DNA from: Octopus sinensis
Lineage: Eukaryota
Direction of reading: 5' to 3'
Assembly (NCBI RefSeq): GCF_006345805.1
Contig: NC_043017.1
Coordinates: forward strand, 27,404,001-27,468,000
Length of the DNA stretch: 64,000 nt
Part shown: positions 6,030-62,427 of the stretch, piece by piece
How positions within the stretch are numbered: position 1 is the first letter of the stretch
Layout: the number at the start of each line of letters is the position of its first letter
Notes under the pieces: generated by a model
What the model saw: only the letters and a program-made list of their open reading frames with translations
Database searches by the model: none
What the model was told of the DNA's origin: nothing
Translations under genes and position numbers: made by a program

Positions 6030-6225
6030 TTTCAACGAAGCTGCGTCTTGTTCTTACCTTCGGAACGCGTAGACGATGAAATCGGGACAACTGAAGAAGG
6101 GGAATATTCCTTGTGTTGAATGTTTTTTCCTTGTTTGAAAAAAGTTCGTTTCCATGTTTTTGTTTTTATGTTTTCGTTTCTCATTGTGTTCAAAGTGTTT
6201 TGATGTCCTGTACCCATATATGCAT
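6030..6225 (+). mobile_element. Penelope-like terminal fragment ending in TA-rich tail
   Basis: Ends TGTCCTGTACCCATATATG; related pieces at about 61820-61960 and, inverted, 62270-62345. Confidence 0.45.
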
Positions 6226-26315: not shown

Positions 26316-26991
26316 ACGTGTGTGTGTGTGTGTGTTTGTGCATGTAAGTATAAGCAGAGGTAGTCGAACATTAAACAGTTTCACTTAAGAAACTCAAGCA
26401 TATCAGTTCGATCCCGCTAAGCGGTATTCTATCTCACAGTCGCTTTCTTTTGGACCGACCTAAAAAGTTGCGAGTGAATTTGGGTAGACGGAAGCAAGTC
26501 TGGCAAGCGTGTCGGCTTGATTGAAGACATAATTCAAAGACTCAGCCTTGACGCACGCAGAATTCTATGATCGATTCTGCTTGAGATAGGGGGAGAGAAC
26601 ATTAAGTAAACTTGCATCTGTTGAATATTTAACTTCTATGCATTCTATCAGTCAACGAGTAGGTAGTTCCGCTGATCTAACATAAACTGGAACAGTCGAG
26701 GTTCGTAAACCGACGCCAGTTCGATCATCTGTGGATAATGCAACCCGAAATTTGCAATAGCACGCAGACGCACACAAACACACAGACACACATACAAACA
26801 CACACACACACACGGAGACACGCACATCGAACACACGCACGCACACTTCTATGCATGTAAGCATAAATATATATTCTTACGTACATATATGTATATATAC
26901 AATTGTATATGTTTAAATATAAATATGCATGTAGATATATATATGTATATATGTTATATATATATATTATATATATATGTATGTATGTATG

Positions 26992-27037
<46 letters not shown>

Positions 27038-27369
27038 ATATACATATATGTAGTTATATACATAATATACATATATGTATGTATATATATATATATATAT
27101 ACATAATATACATATATATGTATATACATATATACATAAAATATATATATACACATATGTATATATACATATGTACACACCGCACGCACATACCCACACA
27201 TACATACATACATATAAGTATATATATATATATATATATACAAAGAGAGGGAGAGAGAGCAAGAGAGAATTGGAGTGTTATTGAGATTGCGCCGGAATGG
27301 AATCGAACATACATTGTGTTCAGTGTAAATTTTGAAGGCTGAAGCTTCCATGCACAATAAGAAACGGCT

Positions 27370-28191: not shown

Positions 28192-28229
<38 letters not shown>

Positions 28230-28368
28230 GACACTAACAGATACACGCACACACACACTAACGGATACACTCGCATACGCAGGTACACACACGTATAGGC
28301 AAACACTGACACACACACACACACACACACACACACGCGAGCACACACTGAAACACACACACGGGGGA

Positions 28369-28402
<34 letters not shown>

Positions 28403-28789
28403 GCATACGAACACACACACGCATAAACACACAGTCATGTACGTGCATAAATCACACACGCGTACACACACAGACTCGCATACACATGGGCTAAACAAAT
28501 ACATACACAAGCACACACATACACAGACACACCCACCCACAGACACATAGACACACAAACAGAAACACATACTAACGCATAAAGACATAAACACACACAC
28601 ACCAGCGCGCACACAATCACACGAACATGTAAACACACAGACACATACAGCCAAACATACACATACAGACAACCACACATACTCACATACAAACACACAA
28701 ACACTCGCATCCAGCCAAACACACACACACATGCTCAGACACACACACAATAACACAAACAAACACACACACACACACACATACACAAA

Positions 28790-31670
28790 CACACACATAG
28801 AGCCAAACACACACATAGAGCCAAACACACACATAGAGCCAAACACACACATAGAGCCAAACACACACATAGAGCCAAACACACACACAGAGCCAAACAC
28901 ACACACAGAGCCAAACACACACACTAGAGCCAAACACACACATAGAGCCAAACACACACATAGAGCCAAACACACACACGGAGCCAAACACACACACGGA
29001 GCCAAACACACACATGGAGCCAAACACACACATAGAGCCAAACACACAACATAGAGCCAAACACACACACATAGAGCCAAACACACATAGAGCCAAAGAC
29101 ACACATAGAGCCAAAGACACACATAGAGCCAAACAACACACATAGAGCCAAAACACACATAGAGCCAAACACACCACATAGAGCCAAAACACACACACAT
29201 AGAGCCAAACACACACCACATAGAGCCAAACACACACATAGAGCCAAACACCACATAGAGCCAAACACACACATAGAGCCAAAACACACAATAGAGCCAA
29301 ACAACACATAGAGCCAAAGACACACACATAGAGCCAAAACACACATAGAGCCAAACACACACACATAGAGCCAAACACACACATAGAGCCAAACACACAC
29401 ACATAGAGCAAACACACACATAGAGCCAACACACACACATAGAGCAAACACACACACATAGAGCAAACCACACACATAGAGCCAAACGCACACATAGAGC
29501 CAACGCACACATAGAGCCAAACGCACACATAGAGCCAAACGCACACATAGAGCCAAACGCACACATAGAGCCAAACACACACATAGAGCCAAACACACAC
29601 ATAGAGCCAAACACACACATAGAGCCAAACACACACAATCACACAAACAAAACACACACACACACATACACACAAACACACACATAGAGCCAAACGCACA
29701 CATAGAGCCAAACGCACACATAGAGCCAAACACACACATAGAGCCAAACACACACATAGAGCCAAACACACACATAGAGCCAAACACACACATAGAGCCA
29801 AACACACACAATCACACAAACAAACACACACACACACACATACACAAACACACACATAGAGCCAAACGCACACATAGAGCCAAACGCACACATAGAGCCA
29901 AACGCACACATAGAGCCAAACACACACATAGAGCCAAACACACACATAGAGCCAAACACACACATAGAGCCAATCACACACAATCACACAAACAAACACA
30001 CACACACACACATACACAAACACACACATAGAGCCAAACGCACACTTAGAGCCAAACGCACACATAGAGCCAAACGCACACATAGAGCCAAACACACACA
30101 TAGAGCCAAACACACACATAGAGCCAAACACACACATAGAGCCAATCACACACAATCACACAAACACACACACACACACACATACACAAACACACATATA
30201 GAGCCAAACGCACACATAGAGCCAACGCACACATAGAGCCAAACGCACACATAGAGCCAAACAACACATAGAGCCAAACACACACATAGAGCCAACACAC
30301 ACATGAGCAATCACACACAAACACACACAAACAAACACAAACACACACATACACAAACACACACCTAGAGCCAAACGCACACATAGAGCCAAACGCACAC
30401 ATAGAGCCAAACGCCACAATAGAGCCAAACGCACACATAGAGCCAAAACACACACATAGAGCCAAACACACACATAGAGCCAAACACACACATAGAGCCA
30501 AACACACACACATAGAGCCAAACACACACATAGAGCCAAACACACACATAGAGCCAAACACACACATAGAGCCAAACACACACACATAGAGCCAAACACA
30601 CACAATCACACAAACAAACACACACACACACACACATACACAAACACACACATAGAGCCAAACGCACACATAGAGCCAAACGCACACATAGAGCCAAACA
30701 CACACACATAGAGCCAAACACACACAATCACACAAACAAACACACACAATCACACAAACAAACACACACACACACACATACACAAACACACACATAGAGC
30801 CAAACACACACATAGAGCCAAACACACACATAGAGCCAAACACACACATAGAGCCAAACACACACACATAGAGCCAAACACACACACATAGAGCCAAACA
30901 CACACATAGAGCCAAACACACACACATAGAGCCAAACACACACATAGAGCCAAACACACACATAGAGCAAACACACACATAGAGCCAAACACACACATAG
31001 AGCCAAACGCACACATAGAGCCAAACACACACACATAGAGCCAAACACACACATAGAGCCAAACACACACATAGAGCCAAACACACACACATAGAGCCAA
31101 ACGCACACATAGAGCCAAACGCACACATAGAGCCAAACACACACACATAGTGCCAAACACACACATAGAGCCAAACACACACATAGAGCCAAACACACAC
31201 ATAGAGCCAAACACACACACATAGAGCCAAACACACACATAGAGCCAAACACACACATAGAGCCAAACACACACATAGAGCCAAACACACACATAGAGCC
31301 AAAACACACACATAGAGCCAAACACACACATAGAGCCAAACACACACACATAGAGCCAAACACACACATAGAGCCAAACGCACACATAGAGCCAAACGCA
31401 CACATAGAGCCAAACACACACACATAGAGCCAAACACACACATAGAGCCAAACACACACATAGAGCCAAACACACACACATAGAGCCAAACACACACATA
31501 GAGCCAAACACACACATAGAGCCAAACACACACAATCACACAAACAAACACACACACACACACATACACAAACACACACATAGAGCCAAACACACACATA
31601 GAGCCAAACACACACATAGAGCCAAACACACACATAGAGCCAAACACACACATACAGCCAAACACACACA
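28790..31670. repeat. About 2.9-kb minisatellite, unit ATAGAGCCAA(AC)n of about 18-20 bp, punctuated by about 45-bp AATCACACAAACAAA(CA)nTACACAAA spacers
   Basis: Direct reading of the array; source of the long CVFGSM/CLAL/WLYV ORFs. Confidence 0.95.
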
Positions 31671-31816
31671 TACAGCCAAACTTACACATACAAACATACA
31701 TACTCAGATACAAACAAACACACAAACACACGCATCCAGCTAAACAAACACACATGCTCAGACACACACACAAACACACACAAACACACACATACAACCA
31801 AACAAACGCATACAGA

Positions 31817-31853
<37 letters not shown>

Positions 31854-32322
31854 ATACACACACACAGGAGCGCGCACTCTCAAGTATCCACATTTGTTGC
31901 ACGTATATTTAAGCATGCGCACTTTGCATGCACAGTTAAATGCAGATATAGGTGCATGAAAACTGCGCTGAAGCTTAACTGTCTACAGAAACGACACACA
32001 GATGCATCTGTCCCGATATTTGAAATGAACTAAAGGTGTGCATACTTGTGTGTCTGGTTGAGTGAATATTGTACAGCAGTGTATATACGTATACGTGTGT
32101 ATGCATGTGAATACACGTGTATGTGTGTGTTTGTATTGTAAATACGTATATGTGTGTCTGTGGATACGTGTGCACATATAGAGAATGTGATTATGCATAT
32201 ATATATATATATATATATATACCGGAGTAAACACATAAATGTGAAACAAGGTGGAAAAAAAGTACTCAAATACCAGTGGTAGAGTAATATGCTATTTTAA
32301 GCAGCAGAAAATTCAACAAACT

Positions 32323-34165: not shown

Positions 34166-35336
34166 TCTTTATTGCCCACAAGGGGCTAAACATAGAGGGG
34201 ACAAACAAGGACAGACGAAGGGATTAAGTCGATTATATCGACCCCGGTGCGTAACTGGTAATTATTTAATCGACTCCGAAAGGATGAAAGGGAAAGTAGA
34301 CCTCGGAGGAATTTGAACTTAGAACATAGCGGCAGAGGAAATACCTATTTCTTTACTAACCACAAGTGGGTAAACACAGAGGATAAGCAAGGACAAACAC
34401 ACGGATTAAGTTGAATACATCGACCCCAGTGCGTAACTGGTACTTAATTTATCGACCCTGAAATGATGAAAGGCAAAGTCGACCTCGGCGGAATTTGAAG
34501 TCTGAACGTAACGGCAGACGAAATACCTATTTCCTTATTACCCACAACGGGCTAAACAAGGACAGACATAGGTATCAAGTCGATTACATCGACCCCAGTG
34601 CGTGACTGGTACTTAATTTATCGACCCCGAAATGATGAAAGGCAAAGTCGACCTCGGCGGAATTTGAACTCTGAACGTAACGGCAGACGAAATACCTATT
34701 TCCTTATTACCCACAACGGGCTAAACAAAGACAGACATAGGTATTAAGTCGATTACATCGACCCCAGTGCGTGACTGGTACTTAATTTATCGACCCCGAA
34801 ATGATGAAAGGCAAAGTCGACCTCGGCGGAATTTGAACTCTGAACGTAACGGCAGACGAATACCTATTTCTTTATTACCCACAAGGGGCTAAACACAGAG
34901 GGGACAAACAAGGACAGCCATAGGTATTAAGTCGATTCCATCGACCCCAGTGCGAAACTGGTACTTAATTTATCGACCCCGAAAGGATGAAAGGCAAAGT
35001 CGACCTCGGCGGAATTTGAACTCACAACGTAACGCAGACAAAATACCGCTAAGCATTTCGCCCGGCATGCTAACGTTTCTGCCAGCTCGCCGCCCTTAAA
35101 ATATATTTCTTTACTACCCACAAGGGGCTAAACACAGAGGGGACAAACAAGGTCAGACGAACGGATTAAGTCGATTACATCGACCCCAGTGCGTGACTGG
35201 TACTTAATTTATCGACCCCGGAAGGATGAAAGGCAAAGTCATCCTCAGCGGAATTTGAACTCAGAACGTAACGGCAGAAGAAATACGGCTAAGCATTTTG
35301 CCCGGCGTGCTAACGTTTCTGCCAGCTCGCTGCCTT
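34166..35336 (-). mobile_element. Tandem array of six SINE A units (two full, four headless)
   Basis: Junctions GAAATAC|CTATTTC at 34344/5, 34526/7, 34695/6, 34863/4; full heads end near 35097 and 35336. Confidence 0.9.
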
Positions 35337-44924: not shown

Positions 44925-44980
<56 letters not shown>

Positions 44981-46610
44981 GTATATGTATATGTTATATA
45001 ATATATGTATAGTATATATATATATATATAATATGTTATATATGTATATGTATATGTATATATATATATATGTATATGTATGTATATATATATATATATA
45101 TGTATATATATGTATATGTATATGTATATATATGTATATGTATCTATATATATGTATATATATGTATATGTATATGTATATATATGTTATGTATATATAT
45201 ATATGTATATATATGTATATGTTATATAATATATATATGTATATGTATATATATAATATATGTATATGTATATATATATGTATATTATATGTATATGTAT
45301 ATATATATATGTATATATATATATGTATATATATATATATGTATATGTATATATATATATGTATATATGTATATGTATATATATATATGTTATATATATA
45401 TATGTATATATATATATGTATATATATATATATGTATATATATATATGTATATATATATATGTATATATATATATGTATATATATATATGTTATATATAT
45501 ATGTATATTATAATGTATATATAATAATGTATATTATATATGTATATATATATATGTATATATATAATGTATATATATAATGTATATATATATATAATGT
45601 ATATTATATATATGTATATATAATATGTGTATATATATATGTGTATATATATATATATGTATATATAATATATGTATATATATATGAATATATATATGTA
45701 TATATTATATGTATATTATGATAATATATATGTATATATATATATGTGATATATATATATGTGTATATATATATGTGTATATATATATGTGTATATATTA
45801 TATGTGTATATATATATGTGTATTATATATTGTATATATATATGTGTATATATATATGTGTATATATATATTGTATATATATATGTGTATATATATATGT
45901 TATATATATATATATGTATATAATGTATATATATATATATGTATATATATATGTATATTATATGTATATATATATGTATATTATATGTATGATATATGTT
46001 ATAATATATGTATATATATATGTTATATATATGTATATATATATATGTAGATATATATATGTATATATATAAGTATATATATATGTATATATATATTATA
46101 ATATATGTATATATATTGTATATATAATATATGTATAAATATACATATATATGTATATATATATATGTATTATATATGTGTATATATGTATATATATATG
46201 TGTAGTATATTATGTATAATGTATATGTATATATGTATATGTGTATATGTATATGTATATATGTATATGTATATGTATTATATGTATGTATGTATATGTA
46301 TGTATGTATATGTATGTATATGTATATGTATATGTATTTATAGTTATATATGTATATGTATATATATATGTATATGTATATGGTATATGTATATATGTAT
46401 ATGTATGATATGTATGTTATATATGTATATGTATATATGTATATGTAGTATATGTATATGTATAATGTATATGTATATATGTATATGTATATATGTATAT
46501 GTATATATTATATATATGTATAATATGTATAGATATATATATAGATATGTATAGATATATACACATATATATAGATATATATATAGATATGTATAGATAT
46601 ATACACACAT
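44925..46610. repeat. 1.7-kb (TA)n/(TATG)n/(TATATG)n tract
   Basis: Direct reading. Confidence 0.95.
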
Positions 46611-49706: not shown

Positions 49707-49742
<36 letters not shown>

Positions 49743-49858
49743 ATATATATTTGTTTTGCAAGATTTTGTTGTGTGTGAATGTATGTACACAAATGTATGT
49801 ATGAGATAGATATATAGATATATATAATAGATATATATATATATATATATATATATAG

Positions 49859-49891
<33 letters not shown>

Positions 49892-49954
49892 GATACATAT
49901 ATATATATATATATATTACATATATATATATATTATATACATAGTATATATATA

Positions 49955-50299
49955 TACATATATAAATATAAAATATAAATTAGTAAAAACACTACGTACG
50001 GTTTTCTCTCAATTATATTATATTTAACTTTTCATACTTTTGCTTAGGTATATATTAAAAGTTTAAATATTTAAAAAAAAAAAGTAAAAATTAAAAATTT
50101 AAATTTTATATATATATATATATATATATTATATTATATTAATTATATTTATTTTTTATGGTTTGGGTTATGTCTATCACTGTTTGAGTTGCCTAATAGT
50201 GGTTTTATCTCTAATTTAATTATATTTATATGCGAAATTGATTTAATCCTAAATCTAATTTTTTCAATGTAAGTTTGGATATACTCCCTAATATTATTG

Positions 50300-50716: not shown

Positions 50717-52930
50717 GTATTATATATAATATATATATATATATTATATATATATATATATATATACATTTGTGTACATACATTCACACACACTACATGT
50801 GCGTGTGTGTGTTTTTAGTGGTATTTCGTCCGTCTTTATTTTAAAATTCGACCGAAGTTGACTTTCCCATTCGGTGTGGATAAGGTAAGCATGAGTTGAG
50901 CAACTTAACGCCCAACCCAGAAATACCTGACTTTGTGCCAAAACTCGTAAGCAATATGAATATGTCTGAGAGCGTATGCGTATGATTGAATGTGTATAAG
51001 TTTATAAAGTACATGTATGTATGTGTGTATGCCTGTATGTATGTGTTTGCATGTTCGTGTCTGAGTCATCATCGTTTCCAAAGGGATTGCTGTAAAACTG
51101 ACATAAAAATAGCTTAAAATAAAGTAGGTGCGGATGTGGCTGTGTGGTAAGTAGCTTGCTTCCCAACCACATGGTTCCAGGTTCAGTGGCACCTTGGCTG
51201 AGTGTCTTCCGCTGTAGACTCAGGCATATCTGAAAGCTTAGGTGTGGATTTGTTAGACTGAAACTGAAAAACGCCAGTCTTATATGTATATACGTATGTG
51301 TTTGTTCCCCCTCCACCGCTTGACCACCGCTGTTGGTGTGTTTACGTCTGCGTAATTTAATGGATCGACAAAAGAGACCGATAGAATAAGCACCAGTGTG
51401 TGAAATATCAAGGGTTCGATTAGCTCGACTAAAAATTCCTCAGGGTGGTACCCCCAGCATGGCCGTGGAATAACGACTGAAACAAAACGGAAAAGAATAA
51501 AAGAATATATATATTCTTTACTGATCACTACAATTGATTCGACCCTTCTCGCATCGATCTTTCGCGGGTCGGATATTGCGGTACTGAACAATGAGTTTAG
51601 GCATATCCCTCGGAGTGGTTGTGTCTCCTCAGGTGATTATGGATGTACACACGTTCACACACACGTGGTCTGCATACTCACACACACGCGTAGTCTGGCG
51701 CACAAGCTCTCACACACAATGAAGAAGGTATTAATAAAGTCGGTGTGTATTACTGTCCATTCATGCGATGCTACTTTTGAAGGGGTCACAGAATACGTGG
51801 TGGACTTCACTGCTTCTAGCTGGTATAGTTATAACACTTGTACACGCATAAATGGGGACATACATATTGATATATACTCATACTTTCTCACACGGATATA
51901 TGAAAGCATTCCAGGGTATATTGCTATATATAAATACACACAAACATAATGATACACTACTGATTCTCTCCCACTTCCTCTTTTTCTCTCTCTCCCGTTG
52001 CTCATACGTGATCATCGTCCACCTTTCTTTTCCTCACGTGATCATCTTTCTTTTCTTCAGTGGTATCATAAGGACTGGACGTTGTACTATCTCCCTCTCT
52101 TCTATCATTTCTTTTGTCAAAGAAAATATTTCTCTAGCGTTCGCTATTTTATCCTCGTTTTGGTCTAATGATCCTCCACGTTCCTTTTCGTTCGGTTTCC
52201 TTTTATGTCTCAACTGTCTTGTTTTTCTTCCCAACTTGGGCTCTCCATAAATACCGAATTATTTTGTTTTGGTACTTATGGGAGCAACTGTCTTCGAAGA
52301 CTCATATTGTCGTTCAGTGCTCGAAATAAAGAGTAGATAGACAGCTGACAACTGATAAAATGTACTTCTTAATGTGACATATTCTCTCTTCCATTTGCTT
52401 CCCTTGTTAGCATATTGAACTCATTTGTTTTCGTATGTCATGTTGTTTACCGTTGGTGACGTTCTGTAACCATATATGCATGTGTGTATATGTATATATA
52501 TTTGTGTGTATGTGTGTGTGTATATATATGCATATATATATTATTCATATCATTATTTGATTGAAAGCCACGAATCCATTTCTAATTAAGTTTATATATA
52601 TACATACAGATATGCATTAACATACGTCTATCAGCACATCTTTTGGGGTTGATATACACGCACATACACGTAAACCCGTTTCTGTACTCAGATACCAACA
52701 CATTTGTATAAATGTATATAAATTGGCACATAAATCTATAGAAATGCACAAGGATATGCAACCATGTGGATACAGATAGATAAAACTGAAACACATACAA
52801 AAGAATGTTACGTCGAAACAGATGTAACGAATGCAATTACTCAGTATCATATCGAAAAAAAAATGATTTAGCTCAACTTCACATCAAGATTTCCTTCTGC
52901 ATTGTGTAGTCTCTGATTATATATATATAT

Positions 52931-53625
52931 AGTTATCCGTAATAATGAAGGGTGAAATTAATTAATTTGGAATAATTATCAATTACACCAAGTAGTCTTC
53001 GGCACGTAAAAGCCTCATTCGAGGAAAATTTAAGTAATACTAAGCAATAAAGGGTTTAGCAACGAATTGCCTTACCACATACCGAATTTAGAAATAGCAG
53101 TCAAAAGGTTATAGCTATTTCTTCTACTAAAAAGGGAGATCTCAGTAAAAACAGCAATTGGAAGGCAGACACAAACACGCGGGTGGGAAGGGGCTGGTGA
53201 CACAATCTTTTCATTCACGCATTGAATTTGGTGATACTATTTTGCGGATTCTAGCTCGCTCTGATACTGAGTTGAGTTGGTGCCTTCTAGTATCTCAAAA
53301 TTCAATATATAATCATTTATGATATAGTATTCTACGCTGAAGAGAAAAGAAGTTTTGGTGAGATAGAATTATTTAATATTTAATTCTTATGCTTTCCTAA
53401 AAACTTGATTTCGAAACGTACGTCCGTAGATAACTTAAAATTGTATGATAGATTGCCGTCAATTCATTCTCTCTTACCTGTTTGTGTCTGCCTTCCAATT
53501 GCTGTTTTTACTGAGATCTCCCTTTTTAGTAGAAGAAATAGCTATAACCTTTTGACTGCTATTTCTAAATTCGGTATGTGGTAAGGCAATTCGTTGCTAA
53601 ACCCTTTATTGCTTAGTATATATAT
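52931..53625. mobile_element. PLE-like terminal structure with perfect 141-bp inverted repeats (53037-53177 / 53479-53619), TA tails outward
   Basis: Arms identical by base-by-base reading; (TA)n at 52915-52930 and 53617-53630. Confidence 0.85.
53331..53430 (+). ncRNA. Canonical type I hammerhead ribozyme with extended stem II; predicted cleavage after C53424 (GUC)
   Basis: UCUACG-CUGAAGA-[GAAA..69-nt hairpin..UUUC]-GAAAC-GUAC-GUC-CGUAGA: 6-bp stem I, all core nucleotides, palindromic ACGUACGU stem III. Confidence 0.85.
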
Positions 53626-53699
53626 ATATACCATTTACACATATTGGTTGTATCTATTGCATGCATAAACTCTCTAGGATGATGTGTTAGTAGATGCGT

Positions 53700-53985
53700 G
53701 TTTTATTATTATTATTATTATCATTATTATTATTATAATTATCATTATTATCATTATTATTATCATCAGTATTATTATCATTATTATTATCATCAGTATT
53801 ATTTTATTATTATCATTATTATCATTATTATTATCATCAGTATTATTATTATTATTATCATTATTATCATTATTATTATCATCAGTATTATCATTATTAT
53901 TATTATCATTATTATTATCATTATTATTATTATTATTATTATCAGTATTATTATTATTATTATCATTATTATTATTATTATTGTA
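53700..53985. repeat. (ATT/ATC)n trinucleotide microsatellite
   Basis: Direct reading. Confidence 0.95.
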
Positions 53986-55654: not shown

Positions 55655-56048
55655 TCGTAGGAATGGATGTGTGGTAAGTAGCTTGCTTACAAACTACATG
55701 GCTCCGGATTCAGTCTCACTGCGTGGCACCTTGGACAGGTGTCTTCTATAACCACGGGCTGACCAAAGCTTTGTGAGTGGATTTGGTAGACGGAAACTGA
55801 AAGAAGCCCATCGTATATATATATATATATATATATGGTGTGTGTCTGTGTGTGCCCGTGTTTGTCCCCCCCGACATCACTTGACAACCGATGCTGGTGT
55901 GTTTACGTCCCCGTCGCTTAGCGGTTCGGCAAAAGAGAAGGATAGAATAAGTACAAGGCCTACAAAAAATAAGTCGTGGGGTCGATTTACTCGACTAAAG
56001 GCGGTGCTCCAGCATGGCCACAGTCAAATGACTGAAACAAGTAAAAGA
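55655..56048 (+). mobile_element. SINE family B
   Basis: Matches family B. Confidence 0.88.
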
Positions 56049-57420
56049 ATATATATATTTATTTATTTAGTCATACACACCATATTGCTCAAAGTATTTA
56101 TTACTTCGTATTTTTCTAATGTGTCACATTGCTTGGCTGCACTTGAGACCACATAGTTCTGAAAGAAACTTCAACCACACATCCAATGCCTACCGCTGTA
56201 TTTATTGATGCTGTTGATGAGTCAATGTTACGGTCCAAATTGATTTTTATGTGACACTCGCAGATATTATCTTCGTGAGTTTATATCAAGTGCAAGGAAA
56301 CTGAAAAGAGCAGAGCCTTCCACTAGTGATTTAAGTTAACTAAATTCATTCAAATCAATATCATTGTTCTGTCGTTGATTATAAATATCACCATTAGAAA
56401 GCAGCGAACAAGCAGAATTGTTAGTACGCAGCATAAGATGATTTGCCGCATTTTTACCGGTTTTACGTTCTTAGATCAATTGCCACCGAGGTCGACATCC
56501 TTTTTCGCAGTCGATAAAATACGTAACTGTTGAGCAGTGAAGTGAATGTAATCGACTTACTCGCACCCTGTAAATTTGCTGGCCTTGTACCAAAATTTGT
56601 ATCCATTATAGTTTGGGCTGAGAAGCATTCGAGCAACAGAAAAAAAATAGCTTTCAGTATTTGCTCCCATTTTCTCGGTTCTTCGTTGAAATATCGCCAA
56701 CGTTAAGTTTGATTTTCATCCGTCCATTTTCCATGATATAAAGAAGTCAAGTTCTATGATCCGATGTTAATGATCGCATATTCTCGCCTCAAAATTCCAG
56801 GCTTTATTCATGAATTTGAAAACATTATACTTATTGGTGTGTTATTGTTTTGTTGTAATACCATCTTCTCTACTACAGTGTATACCAACATATTTTCGCC
56901 AACATTGAATCCATATTTATGTACAGCATATGTTTTGCTTTCAATTCGAATCGTTTTGATTTAACAGTTTTGAAATACGTGTAACGGTACCGTAACATAT
57001 ATAAAATGGAGCCCGTTCTGACCACGAATAACTTTGTACATTATGTGATTTATAGTACAGAAAAGAAATATATTTGCCACCGGATCTAAACATTTTTATA
57101 CTTCAGAATTGTTCCAAACATCGTATAATAATGTTTTACAAAATAGGGGATTATATTTTAGATGACGTCTGTAAACATAGAAATACGACGGTCAATGTAA
57201 TTGACAGTTTGTGAGGTTTCTCGGGTTGGTAAAAAAATAAGTACCAAATAAGTAGCCACTACACACATTTTTTCACTCATTTTTTCACTCCCTTTTCTCT
57301 CCTTTTCTCACTCCTTTTTTTCTCTCCTTTTTCTCTCTCCTTTTTTCTCTCCTTTTTCTCTCTCCTTTTTTTCACTCCTTTTTTTCACTCCTTTTTTCAC
57401 TCCTTGTTTTTTCTGTGTCC

Positions 57421-61963: not shown

Positions 61964-62049
<86 letters not shown>

Positions 62050-62170
62050 GTGTGTGTGTGTGTGTGTATATATATATAGACTTAATATATATATATTTAG
62101 ATATATACACACATAATATATATTATATATATATATACACACATAATATATATATATATATATACACATA

Positions 62171-62235
<65 letters not shown>

Positions 62236-62427
62236 CATACATACATAATATATATATATTTATATGCATATATGGGTACAGGAAGTAACAAACAGTAAAC
62301 AACATGAAATACGTAATCAAATGAGTTGAAAGCGCAACCAACGAAAGAAATCATTTTATTTATATTTATATATATTTAAACACTTATATATATATATATA
62401 TTTATACATATATGTATATATATTTAA

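What the first reader, a model, noticed from the sequence alone, without database searches (positions are those of the whole stretch)
53037..53619. Intact hammerhead with a 69-nt stem II enclosed by perfect 141-bp inverted repeats
Seen: every core base is canonical (CUGAAGA, GAAA, GUC) and stem I is 6 bp. Stem II is 4 bp, a 2x2 AG/GA loop, 7 bp, then a further AU-rich helix. Stem III is a 2-bp helix with GUAC loop, or an 8-bp ACGUACGU intermolecular duplex. The arms have no mismatches, so the event is recent. Established: HHR stem II is usually short and its loop docks on stem I. Inference: a young, probably active PLE/retrozyme terminus with an unusual stem II; a plus-strand transcript would form a 141-bp duplex whose 301-nt loop is self-cleaved. 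Best experimental candidate in the window.
Basis: partly seen in the sequence, partly recalled or inferred. Interest (0 to 1): 0.9.

Follow-up and report, generated by a model that had tools for sequence, protein, structure and literature searches.

The report
Hammerhead retroelement inserted head-to-head in octopus
The perfect inverted repeat is the overlap of two copies of a small hammerhead-ribozyme-carrying, non-coding retroelement that were reverse-transcribed head-to-head into a (TA)n microsatellite, the usual insertion pattern of Penelope-like elements, so the structure is real but largely ordinary apart from the ribozyme's very long stem II.

Summary
Both observations hold. The arms 53037-53177 and 53479-53619 are 141 nt and 100% complementary. 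A complete type I hammerhead lies at 53331-53430, with predicted cleavage after C53424.

The inverted repeat is not a terminal repeat. The genome matches Octopus sinensis by assembly statistics. It holds a young, ORF-less family with a 593-nt unit, in head-to-tail arrays. An exact hammerhead pattern finds 2,275 intact copies.

Nearly every insertion lies in (TA)n. The 3' ends fall at two sites only and the 5' ends vary. Most insertions are a minus copy joined head-to-head to a plus copy. In 34 of 34 clear pairs one arm ends at the unit end and the other carries a ~105-nt tail.

The window holds one such insertion, 52927-53619. It has a 251-nt minus arm with the tail and a 445-nt plus arm with the only hammerhead, joined by 3 nt of microhomology. 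This matches published Penelope-like element behaviour.

Stem II is 59-83 nt across subfamilies and no short version exists. One stem II pair covaries (A-U, G.U, G-C; A.C almost absent). Rfam scores it 21 bits, below its cut-off of 34.

Cleavage, transcription and the autonomous partner are untested.

The parts
52918..52931 (.). Left (TA)n, a remnant of the target microsatellite
   Evidence: Sequence read. 45 of 46 family arrays have (TA)n at their 3' flank.
52927..53036 (-). The 'tail': reverse complement of unit positions u1 to about u105-110, the sequence that follows the unit end in tandem arrays. It forms the outer part of the minus arm. Its end is ambiguous over 52927-52932 because it overlaps the TA run.
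   Evidence: WIN 1927-2177, minus, u453..u110. The tail junction with (TA)n occurs 362 times in the genome.
53037..53177 (-). Left arm of the inverted repeat: reverse complement of the last 141 nt of the unit (u453-u593). It forms the inner part of the minus arm.
53175..53177 (.). Head-to-head junction: 3 nt (ACA) shared by the 5' ends of both arms (microhomology)
   Evidence: overlap -3. Among the 20 pairs, 14 junctions have 0-10 nt of overlap and 6 have 2-11 nt of filler.
53175..53619 (+). Plus arm: unit positions u149-u593 (445 of 593 nt), 5'-truncated, ending at the canonical unit end ..GCTTAGTAT
   Evidence: It differs from the 445-nt family consensus at 6 alignment columns, none inside the hammerhead.
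53331..53430 (+). Type I hammerhead ribozyme motif. Stem I 53331-53336 / 53425-53430; CUGAAGA 53337-53343; stem II 53344-53412 (69 nt); GAAA 53413-53416; stem III C-GUAC-G 53417-53422; U53423 C53424; predicted cut between 53424 and 53425.
   Evidence: It is identical to the commonest haplotype, found in 22 of 58 independent copies.
53479..53619 (+). Right arm of the inverted repeat: the last 141 nt of the plus arm
53617..53630 (.). Right (TA)n, a remnant of the target microsatellite
   Evidence: The unit-end junction with (TA)n occurs 497 times in the genome.

Best explanation
Window 52927-53619 is one insertion of a non-autonomous, hammerhead-bearing tandem retroelement. By its features it is a metazoan 'non-LTR retrozyme', or PLE-derived repeat: unit 593 nt, no ORF, 35% GC.

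Inferred mechanism:
1. A PLE reverse transcriptase / GIY-YIG endonuclease acting in trans cut both strands of a (TA)n microsatellite.
2. Each 3'-OH primed reverse transcription inside the element RNA, one at the unit end (u593) and one about 105 nt further downstream. That second start gives the 'tail'.
3. The template was longer than one unit: a multimeric transcript or a circle.
4. The two cDNAs grew towards each other, stopped at arbitrary points, and were joined through 3 nt of microhomology.

The stretch copied by both arms, the last 141 nt of the unit, therefore appears as a perfect inverted repeat.

The hammerhead belongs to the element's RNA and not to this locus. In tandem transcripts it would cut once per unit, most likely as a dimer through the ACGUACGU helix III or with protein help. 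Its long, covarying stem II is a family trait.

Shown here: the anatomy, the family, the target, the two 3' end classes, the one-of-each rule, microhomology at junctions, the strong fold of the unit RNA, and one covarying stem II pair.

Inferred only: the enzyme, priming on both strands, the form of the template, and self-cleavage.
For: Family and unit:
- More than 200 matches at 97-99% identity; head-to-tail arrays with a period of 593.
- The exact pattern CTGANGAG-N37-90-CGAAACGTACGTC finds 2,275 sites; the reversed-pattern control finds 0.
- No ORF longer than 66 aa; GC 34.6%.
- The unit RNA cut at the hammerhead site folds at -160.4 kcal/mol against -122.1 +/- 5.5 for shuffles (z = -6.9, 0 of 100 shuffles as stable). 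Hammerhead stems I and II are kept in that fold.

Insertion architecture:
- 45 of 46 arrays have (TA)n at the 3' flank. The 3' ends fall only at u593 (27 arrays) or u92-110 (19); the 5' ends vary.
- There are 20 head-to-head pairs and none tail-to-tail. In all 19 pairs made of full arms, one arm has each kind of end.
- 15 further pairs with one end of each kind follow from the coordinates.
- The junction differs at every locus.
- Arms within a pair are more alike than arms from different loci: 99.11% against 98.61%.

Resident enzymes:
- RT + C-terminal GIY-YIG ORFs of 781 aa are very abundant.
- Their 3' ends also abut (TA)n in four to five independent copies.

Literature:
- PLE insertions show 5' truncation, partial tandems, an adjacent inverted 5'-truncated copy, a tail at only one end, and microsatellite bias; (TA)n is the bias named for Naiad PLEs (PMC8557442).
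- A purified PLE protein cuts and extends both strands of AT-rich DNA. It starts reverse transcription at two internal RNA sites, and the tail is the sequence between them (PMC11167929).
- Non-LTR retrozymes are tandem, carry a type I hammerhead, have low GC and consensus lengths of 51-972 bp, and are related to PLE pseudo-LTRs (PMC7229834; bioRxiv 10.64898/2026.07.22.740005).

Hammerhead:
- Full-length Rfam alignment.
- Stem II pair 10.3-11.3: A-U about 2,190, G.U about 17, G-C about 53, A.C 2.
Against: - No autonomous partner was identified. The unit shows no sequence similarity to the 5' or 3' parts of the one abundant PLE family examined.
- Rfam's gathering score is not reached (21.1 against 34 bits).
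- A second stem II pair shows C-G and U.G variants, but also about ten A.G mismatches and one C.A.
- The copies share descent, so the covariation counts sequences and not independent events.
- 5' ends are not enriched at the cleavage site: one array of nine solo arrays ends within 3 nt of it. Nothing here shows cleavage in vivo.
- In the anole PLE the hammerhead was dispensable for insertion in vitro.
- Units within an array differ by 0.58%, which gives no support to rolling-circle copying of a monomeric circle.
- One place, C1:177187065-177187522, may hold a pair with two unit-end termini.
- I could not examine reads to validate the assembly at this locus.
Confidence: 0.8

Rival explanations
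1. The locus is a miniature inverted-repeat DNA transposon, or foldback element, with 141-bp terminal inverted repeats and a TA target duplication (Tc1/mariner or Stowaway style). The hammerhead motif is merely carried along.
For: Perfect arms with TA on both sides. Three other loci match all 583 nt.
Against: - Those loci have different inner junctions and arm lengths.
- The left arm continues about 105 nt beyond 53037 with no partner on the right.
- The same sequence forms head-to-tail arrays of up to at least 15 units.
- Fixed 3' ends with variable 5' ends are the signature of reverse transcription.
- The flanks are long (TA)n runs and not a 2-bp duplication.
Confidence: 0.03
2. The inverted repeat is an assembly artefact, for example a palindromic chimeric long read, and the real locus holds a single plus copy.
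For: Long-read assemblies can contain such chimeras. I could not inspect reads. Craig et al. note that PLE insertions often cause assembly problems.
Against: - The same architecture recurs at 34 or more loci with a lawful rule: one arm ends at the unit end, the other carries the tail, and both outer ends lie in (TA)n.
- The arms are unequal, as expected from two independent stops of reverse transcription. A chimeric read would give a mirror image.
Confidence: 0.03
3. One reading: this is the pseudo-LTR terminus of an autonomous Penelope-like element, young and itself active.
For: PLE pseudo-LTRs carry hammerheads and can be inverted. PLE ORFs are abundant in this genome.
Against: - tblastn with two PLE ORFs finds nothing in the 64-kb window.
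- The two neighbouring ORFs scanned (51002-51439, 51404-51949) have no Pfam domain; those at 51852-52250 and 55752-56156 were not scanned.
- The insertion is bounded by (TA)n at 52918-52931 and 53617-53630, so it is complete at 693 nt.
- In arrays, units follow each other directly with no ORF.
- The locus holds a truncated unit and only one ribozyme.
Confidence: 0.05
4. A variant of the best explanation in which the template differs. Self-cleaved, ligated circular unit RNA (the classical retrozyme cycle) is copied by rolling-circle reverse transcription, not a linear multimeric transcript.
For: - Arms and arrays run across the hammerhead cleavage site and exceed one unit. That requires uncleaved multimers or religated circles.
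- The unit RNA is highly structured.
- Metazoan retrozymes are expressed as circRNAs ligated by RtcB.
Against: - Units inside one array are not identical: 0.58% against 1.00% between arrays.
- The anole PLE uses unprocessed multimeric RNA in vitro, and no reads end at its ribozyme site.
- No RNA data were available here.
Confidence: 0.3

Closest known systems
Metazoan non-LTR retrozymes (Cervera and de la Pena 2020, PMC7229834; Li, Clavereau and Pollet 2026, bioRxiv 10.64898/2026.07.22.740005)
   Same: - Head-to-tail repeats with one type I hammerhead per unit.
- No ORF and low GC (34.6%).
- Unit length within the reported 51-972 bp.
- Helix I of 6 bp, proximal helix II of 4 bp, and a short palindromic helix III.
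- Strongly structured unit RNA.
- Co-occurrence with PLEs.
   Different: - Helix II continues for 59-83 nt where a loop 2 of a few nt is usual. Rfam's cut-off and the usual descriptors therefore miss it.
- The 593-nt unit exceeds the ~170-400 nt of the circRNAs first described.
- Expression, cleavage and circularisation are untested.
- No cephalopod retrozyme turned up in the paper library.
Penelope-like element insertions with pseudo-LTRs (Craig et al. 2021, PMC8557442; Frangieh et al. 2024, PMC11167929)
   Same: - 5' truncation and partial tandems.
- An adjacent inverted 5'-truncated copy that creates inverted repeats.
- An extension ('tail') at only one end.
- An AT-rich / (TA)n target.
- Two alternative reverse transcription start sites, with the hammerhead upstream of them.
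   Different: - No RT/GIY-YIG ORF, so the element is non-autonomous.
- The tail is about 105 nt against the reported 30-40 bp.
- One tail per head-to-head pair holds in 34 of 34 clear cases here, whereas the literature says 'often'.
- No sequence similarity to the one resident PLE family examined.
Hammerhead ribozyme type I, Rfam RF00163
   Same: All core bases, the G10.1-C11.1 pair, the type I topology, and a full-length alignment to the model.
   Different: - A 65-nt insertion in stem II; 21.1 bits against a gathering score of 34.
- No hairpin loop 2 close to the core to dock on stem I. The AG/GA internal loop 4 bp from the core could take that role, as internal loops do in type II hammerheads (my inference from general knowledge, untested).
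L1 twin priming
   Same: The second target strand primes a second cDNA, which gives a head-to-head inversion with microhomology at the junction.
   Different: Here both arms carry a genuine 3' end of the element at the target, because both strands of (TA)n offer the same primer. The arms also overlap in sequence, which does not happen when two parts of one RNA are split between them.

Membership tests
Hammerhead ribozyme, type I (RF00163) | Conserved core CUGANGA ... GAAA ... UH, with the G10.1-C11.1 pair | tested here: met
   CTGAAGA, G...C closing stem II, GAAA, GTC.
Hammerhead ribozyme, type I (RF00163) | Three helices with helix I open-ended | tested here: met
   The fold and the Rfam alignment show stem I of 6 bp, stem II closed, and stem III of 2 bp with a GUAC loop.
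Hammerhead ribozyme, type I (RF00163) | Score at or above Rfam's gathering threshold (34 bits) | tested here: not met
   No hit. 21.1 bits, E=0.0038, on 119 nt. The loss comes from the 65-nt stem II insertion.
Hammerhead ribozyme, type I (RF00163) | Helices supported by compensatory change | tested here: inconclusive
   Pair 10.3-11.3: A-U about 2,190, G.U about 17, G-C about 53, A.C 2 (the tally of the rows is mine). A second pair shows C-G and U.G but also A.G. Copies share descent, so independent events are few.
Hammerhead ribozyme, type I (RF00163) | Loop-loop tertiary contact between helices I and II | not testable with these tools
   There is no hairpin loop 2 near the core, only an AG/GA internal loop 4 bp from it and a 2x2 internal loop after 6 bp of helix I.
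Hammerhead ribozyme, type I (RF00163) | Self-cleavage at the predicted site | not testable with these tools
   Needs in vitro transcription. One array has its 5' end within 3 nt of the site, which is within chance.
Metazoan non-LTR retrozyme | Head-to-tail tandem units, each with a type I hammerhead | tested here: met
   Met for the family: arrays of 2 to at least 15 units. This locus holds only one truncated unit plus an inverted fragment.
Metazoan non-LTR retrozyme | Non-coding, low GC, unit of tens to hundreds of nt | tested here: met
   Longest open stretch 66 aa, GC 34.6%, 593 nt. The reported range is 51-972 bp.
Metazoan non-LTR retrozyme | Expressed as linear and circular unit-length RNA | not testable with these tools
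   No RNA data. Only a strong predicted fold (z = -6.9).
Metazoan non-LTR retrozyme | Sequence relationship to the pseudo-LTR of a resident PLE | tested here: not met
   No similarity to the 5' or 3' parts of one abundant PLE family. Other PLE families (69-72% identity classes) were not examined.
PLE-type (GIY-YIG/RT) insertion | 5' truncation, partial tandems, an adjacent inverted 5'-truncated copy | tested here: met
   20 head-to-head pairs, variable 5' ends, arrays.
PLE-type (GIY-YIG/RT) insertion | Two alternative 3' ends, with the 'tail' at only one end of an insertion | tested here: met
   3' ends at u593 or u92-110 only. 19 of 19 pairs made of full arms, plus 15 more, have one of each.
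PLE-type (GIY-YIG/RT) insertion | AT-rich or microsatellite target | tested here: met
   (TA)n at 45 of 46 3' flanks. Genome-wide there are 497 and 362 junctions with (TA)n. Resident PLEs end in (TA)n too.
PLE-type (GIY-YIG/RT) insertion | Element encodes RT and GIY-YIG endonuclease | tested here: not met
   No such ORF in the unit, in the window, or next to the arrays. The element would have to be mobilised in trans.
MITE / Tc1-mariner-like DNA transposon | Constant terminal inverted repeats in all copies and a 2-bp TA duplication | tested here: not met
   Arm length and inner junction differ at every locus. The flanks are long (TA)n runs.

The most novel reading that the evidence does not exclude
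The family may be a natural, genome-wide record of how Penelope-like enzymes integrate. In every clear head-to-head insertion one target strand started reverse transcription at the unit end and the other about 105 nt downstream. That would mean a dimeric enzyme loads the two strands of a self-complementary (TA)n cut onto the two start sites of one RNA in a coordinated way.

In addition, the 59-83-nt helix II may define a hammerhead subclass that current descriptors miss. Its extension may serve as a protein-binding or folding platform.
Probability: 0.3. Interest if true: 0.6.

Novelty: new variant of a known kind. Interest (0 to 1): 0.4.

Why it matters
The finding is not a new kind of element. 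It extends hammerhead-bearing PLE-dependent repeats to an octopus genome. It also shows that a type I hammerhead with a helix II six to eight times the usual length can sit in a family of more than 2,000 intact copies and go undetected at Rfam's threshold. Surveys based on Rfam or on short-loop descriptors probably undercount such ribozymes.

The family also gives a clean data set for the poorly understood PLE integration step: hundreds of young insertions, one target motif, two sharply defined start sites and readable junctions. The one-tail-per-insertion rule is a testable prediction for the in vitro system published in 2024.

Finally, most insertions of this family form long perfect hairpins when transcribed. 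In an animal with heavy RNA editing these are candidate double-stranded RNA sources. That last point is speculation.

Tried and rejected
- Rfam at gathering score on the whole window, and at E<=10 on 1 kb: no hammerhead. Only the 119-nt search recovered it.
- Search for an autonomous partner. I compared the unit by blastn (word size 7) with 12 loci around GIY-YIG hits and 12 loci around the N-terminal part of the abundant PLE ORF. Nothing scored better than E=0.1. tblastn of PLE ORFs against the window and the family loci gave only two distant degenerate fragments.
For that reason no formal covariation test (count of structure pairs) could be run on diverged copies. I did not retype the printed sequences.
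- Short-stem-II relatives with the same core and helix III: none in the genome.
- Covariation within the young subfamily: too little variation. There are 27 haplotypes in 58 copies, mostly singletons.
- Rolling-circle signature (identical units within an array): not seen.
- Enrichment of 5' ends at the cleavage site: not seen.
- Genes near the locus: ten window ORFs have no convincing Pfam domain.
- MITE and artefact readings were rejected as set out under the rival explanations.

Full report
**The observation**

The inverted repeat is exactly as described. Arms 53037-53177 and 53479-53619 are 141 nt, 100% complementary and 301 nt apart.

The hammerhead is also there:
- Stem I: TCTACG (53331-53336) pairs with CGTAGA (53425-53430).
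- CTGAAGA: 53337-53343.
- Stem II: 69 nt, 53344-53412.
- GAAA: 53413-53416.
- Stem III: C-GTAC-G, 53417-53422.
- TC: 53423-53424.

A descriptor as strict as the observed motif found nothing in 82 dinucleotide shuffles of the window. A loose one found 0.06 per shuffle. Rfam finds nothing at its gathering score, nor at E<=10 on 1 kb. On the 119 nt alone, Hammerhead_1 aligns over its whole length at 21.1 bits, E=0.0038, with 65 nt where the model has 10.

**The organism**

The window is C21:27404001-27468000 of an assembly of 2,719,151,902 bases in 13,516 sequences. A published table gives the same figures for Octopus sinensis ASM634580v1: 13,516 scaffolds and 2719.2 Mb (PMC10700109). I take the genome to be O. 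sinensis on that basis alone.

**The family**

The 583 nt match more than 200 places. The recurrent piece is the last 445 nt (window 53175-53619). In arrays it alternates with a 148-nt segment, which gives a 593-nt head-to-tail unit. I number the 148-nt segment u1-u148 and the 445 nt u149-u593. The predicted cut is after u398.

- The unit has no open stretch above 66 aa and 34.6% GC.
- Cut at the ribozyme site, its RNA folds at -160.4 kcal/mol against -122.1 +/- 5.5 for shuffles (z = -6.9). Hammerhead stems I and II are retained.
- The exact pattern CTGANGAG-N(37-90)-CGAAACGTACGTC occurs 2,275 times; the reversed control gives 0. Arrays reach at least 15 units.
- With N(6-36) there is no hit, so the long stem II is a trait of the whole family.
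- Subfamilies have stem II of about 59, 69, 76 and 83 nt. The young ones differ by 7-nt steps in the distal AU-rich hairpin.
- The window's hammerhead is the commonest haplotype, 22 of 58 independent copies; the core is broken in 2.
- Mean divergence from the consensus is 0.57%.

**What the inverted repeat is**

The left flank of the window, 52927-53036, is the reverse complement of u1 to about u105-110. The locus is therefore built as follows:
- (TA)n on the left.
- A minus-strand arm, u453-593 plus the tail (52927-53177).
- A plus-strand arm, u149-593 (53175-53619), sharing 3 nt (ACA) with the minus arm.
- (TA)n on the right.

The 141-bp repeat is simply the part present in both arms. The three other full-length matches have different junctions and arm lengths. 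They are independent events and not copies of one inverted-repeat element.

**The rule behind it**

I surveyed 46 de-duplicated arrays.
- 45 have (TA)n at the 3' flank.
- The 3' ends fall only at u593 (27 arrays) or u92-110 (19). The 5' ends are scattered.
- There are 20 head-to-head pairs and no tail-to-tail pair.
- In all 19 pairs made of full arms, one arm ends at u593 and the other carries the tail.
- Eight of the nine solo arrays end at u593.
- Of the 20 inner junctions, 14 have 0-10 nt of overlap and 6 have 2-11 nt of filler.

Genome-wide there are 497 exact u593/(TA)n junctions and 362 exact tail/(TA)n junctions. Cross-matching the printed coordinates on C1, C2 and part of C3 gives 15 further pairs. 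All have one end of each type and the expected strands. One complex place, C1:177187065-177187522, may be an exception. If the two ends were chosen independently, about half the pairs would be mixed. Observing 34 of 34 mixed is far from that expectation.

Arms of a pair are more alike (99.11%) than arms from different loci (98.61%).

**Comparison with what is known**

Craig et al. describe PLE insertions as 5'-truncated and partly tandem. They often have an inverted 5'-truncated copy at the 5' end that creates inverted repeats, and a 30-40-bp tail at only one end. They insert preferentially into microsatellites, and (TA)n is the bias named for Naiads (PMC8557442).

Frangieh et al. worked with a purified PLE protein. 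It cuts and extends both strands of AT-rich DNA and starts reverse transcription at two internal RNA sites. The tail is the sequence between those sites, and the template is a multi-copy transcript. The hammerhead is protein-assisted and not needed for insertion in vitro (PMC11167929).

Non-LTR retrozymes are tandem, ORF-less, low-GC repeats with a type I hammerhead. They are expressed as circRNAs and related to PLE pseudo-LTRs (PMC7229834; bioRxiv 10.64898/2026.07.22.740005).

This genome is full of RT + C-terminal GIY-YIG ORFs of 781 aa. Their 3' ends also abut (TA)n. The window insertion fits this picture point by point. It departs from it in a tail of about 105 nt and in a strictly kept one-tail rule.

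**Mechanism (inferred)**

1. Both strands of (TA)n read the same, so a double cut gives two equivalent primers.
2. One primer starts at u593 and the other about 105 nt downstream.
3. Both cDNAs run upstream on a template longer than one unit.
4. Their 3' ends meet and are joined by microhomology.

The template must span the ribozyme site, because arms and arrays cross u398. It was therefore either uncleaved or religated. The data do not distinguish a linear multimer from a circle. Units within an array differ by 0.58% against 1.00% between arrays.

**Is the hammerhead functional?**

For:
- A complete core and the type I topology.
- A palindromic short helix III like the canonical hammerheads of the same genome that pass Rfam's cut-off.
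- 2,275 intact copies.
- Stem II pair 10.3-11.3 goes from A-U (about 2,190) through G.U (about 17) to G-C (about 53). A.C occurs twice. G-C is found on two sequence backgrounds (the tally is mine).

Against or open:
- A second pair shows C-G and U.G, but also about ten A.G mismatches.
- The copies are related by descent.
- There is no loop 2 near the core for the usual tertiary contact.
- No cleavage data exist.

Supported: a hammerhead of the PLE/retrozyme world, a young family, an unusual stem II, and the hairpin fold.

Not supported:
- A 'terminus'. The insertion is complete and no RT or GIY-YIG coding sequence is found in the window.
- Recency inferred from perfect arms. About one difference is expected in 141 nt.
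- 'Best experimental candidate'. The locus has a single ribozyme in a truncated unit, and the dimeric helix III would need a second copy.

**Limits**

- The autonomous partner is unknown.
- No reads, RNA data or sister genomes were available.

Noticed in passing
L049:2200-2900 (hammerhead-like motif at 2621-2678, +): A second candidate hammerhead with a long stem II (39 nt) and a palindromic CTCGAG helix III. It lies in a repeat of roughly 470 nt next to long (TA)n runs. Stem II closes with G.U where G-C is usual, so it may be chance or a degenerate relative of another retrozyme family.
   Followed up: partly
L040:1902-1978 (+), and the canonical hit at G000:C5:60037714-60037760 (near L040:1501-1547): A hammerhead-like motif with a 58-nt stem II and a CGGCCG helix III lies about 400 nt downstream of a canonical type I hammerhead that passes Rfam's cut-off. 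All three long-stem-II motifs seen have a fully palindromic 6-nt helix III.
   Followed up: no
G000, e.g. L052, L053, L058-L069: A very abundant Penelope-like element family with open 781-aa RT + C-terminal GIY-YIG frames (8,275 first-look candidates). It has subfamilies at about 90-100%, 72% and 69% protein identity. The 3' end ..CTTTTTTACAAAT abuts (TA)n in four to five independent copies. My descriptor found no hammerhead in the parts held.
   Followed up: partly
L009:1501-2878 (the same sequence is in L010, L025 and L026): A solo array whose 5' end (u401, next to (TA)n) lies within 3 nt of the predicted hammerhead cut. It is the only such case among nine solo arrays, which is compatible with chance. 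The unplaced contigs C12618 and C12611 carry identical copies of this region, so they are probably haplotigs or duplicated scaffolds.
   Followed up: partly
G000:C1:177187065-177187522: Two unit-end/(TA)n junctions on opposite strands, 174 nt apart, followed by a tail/(TA)n junction 259 nt further on. This is a possible exception to the one-tail-per-pair rule, or two adjacent insertions. The sequence could not be fetched.
   Followed up: no
window 28193-31867: A 3.7-kb satellite with units of 36 and 54 nt rich in (CA)n (ACACACACATAGAGCCAA...). Strand asymmetry is extreme: GC skew -0.52 and AT skew +0.75.
   Followed up: no
window 44933-46603; also 26885-27172, 49707-49970, 62015-62273: Long (AT)n microsatellites, one of 1.7 kb. 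This is the target motif of the family and of the resident PLEs, and it is very frequent in this window.
   Followed up: no
window 34169-35047: Five tandem copies of a 169-nt unit at 84% identity. Its nature was not examined.
   Followed up: no
window 6091-6159 (+): A weak hammerhead-like match with stem III of 1 bp around a 17-nt segment. It passes only the loose descriptor, which gives 0.06 hits per shuffled window. Probably chance.
   Followed up: partly
window 53703-53982: A (TTA)n microsatellite of about 94 repeats lies 85 nt downstream of the insertion.
   Followed up: no
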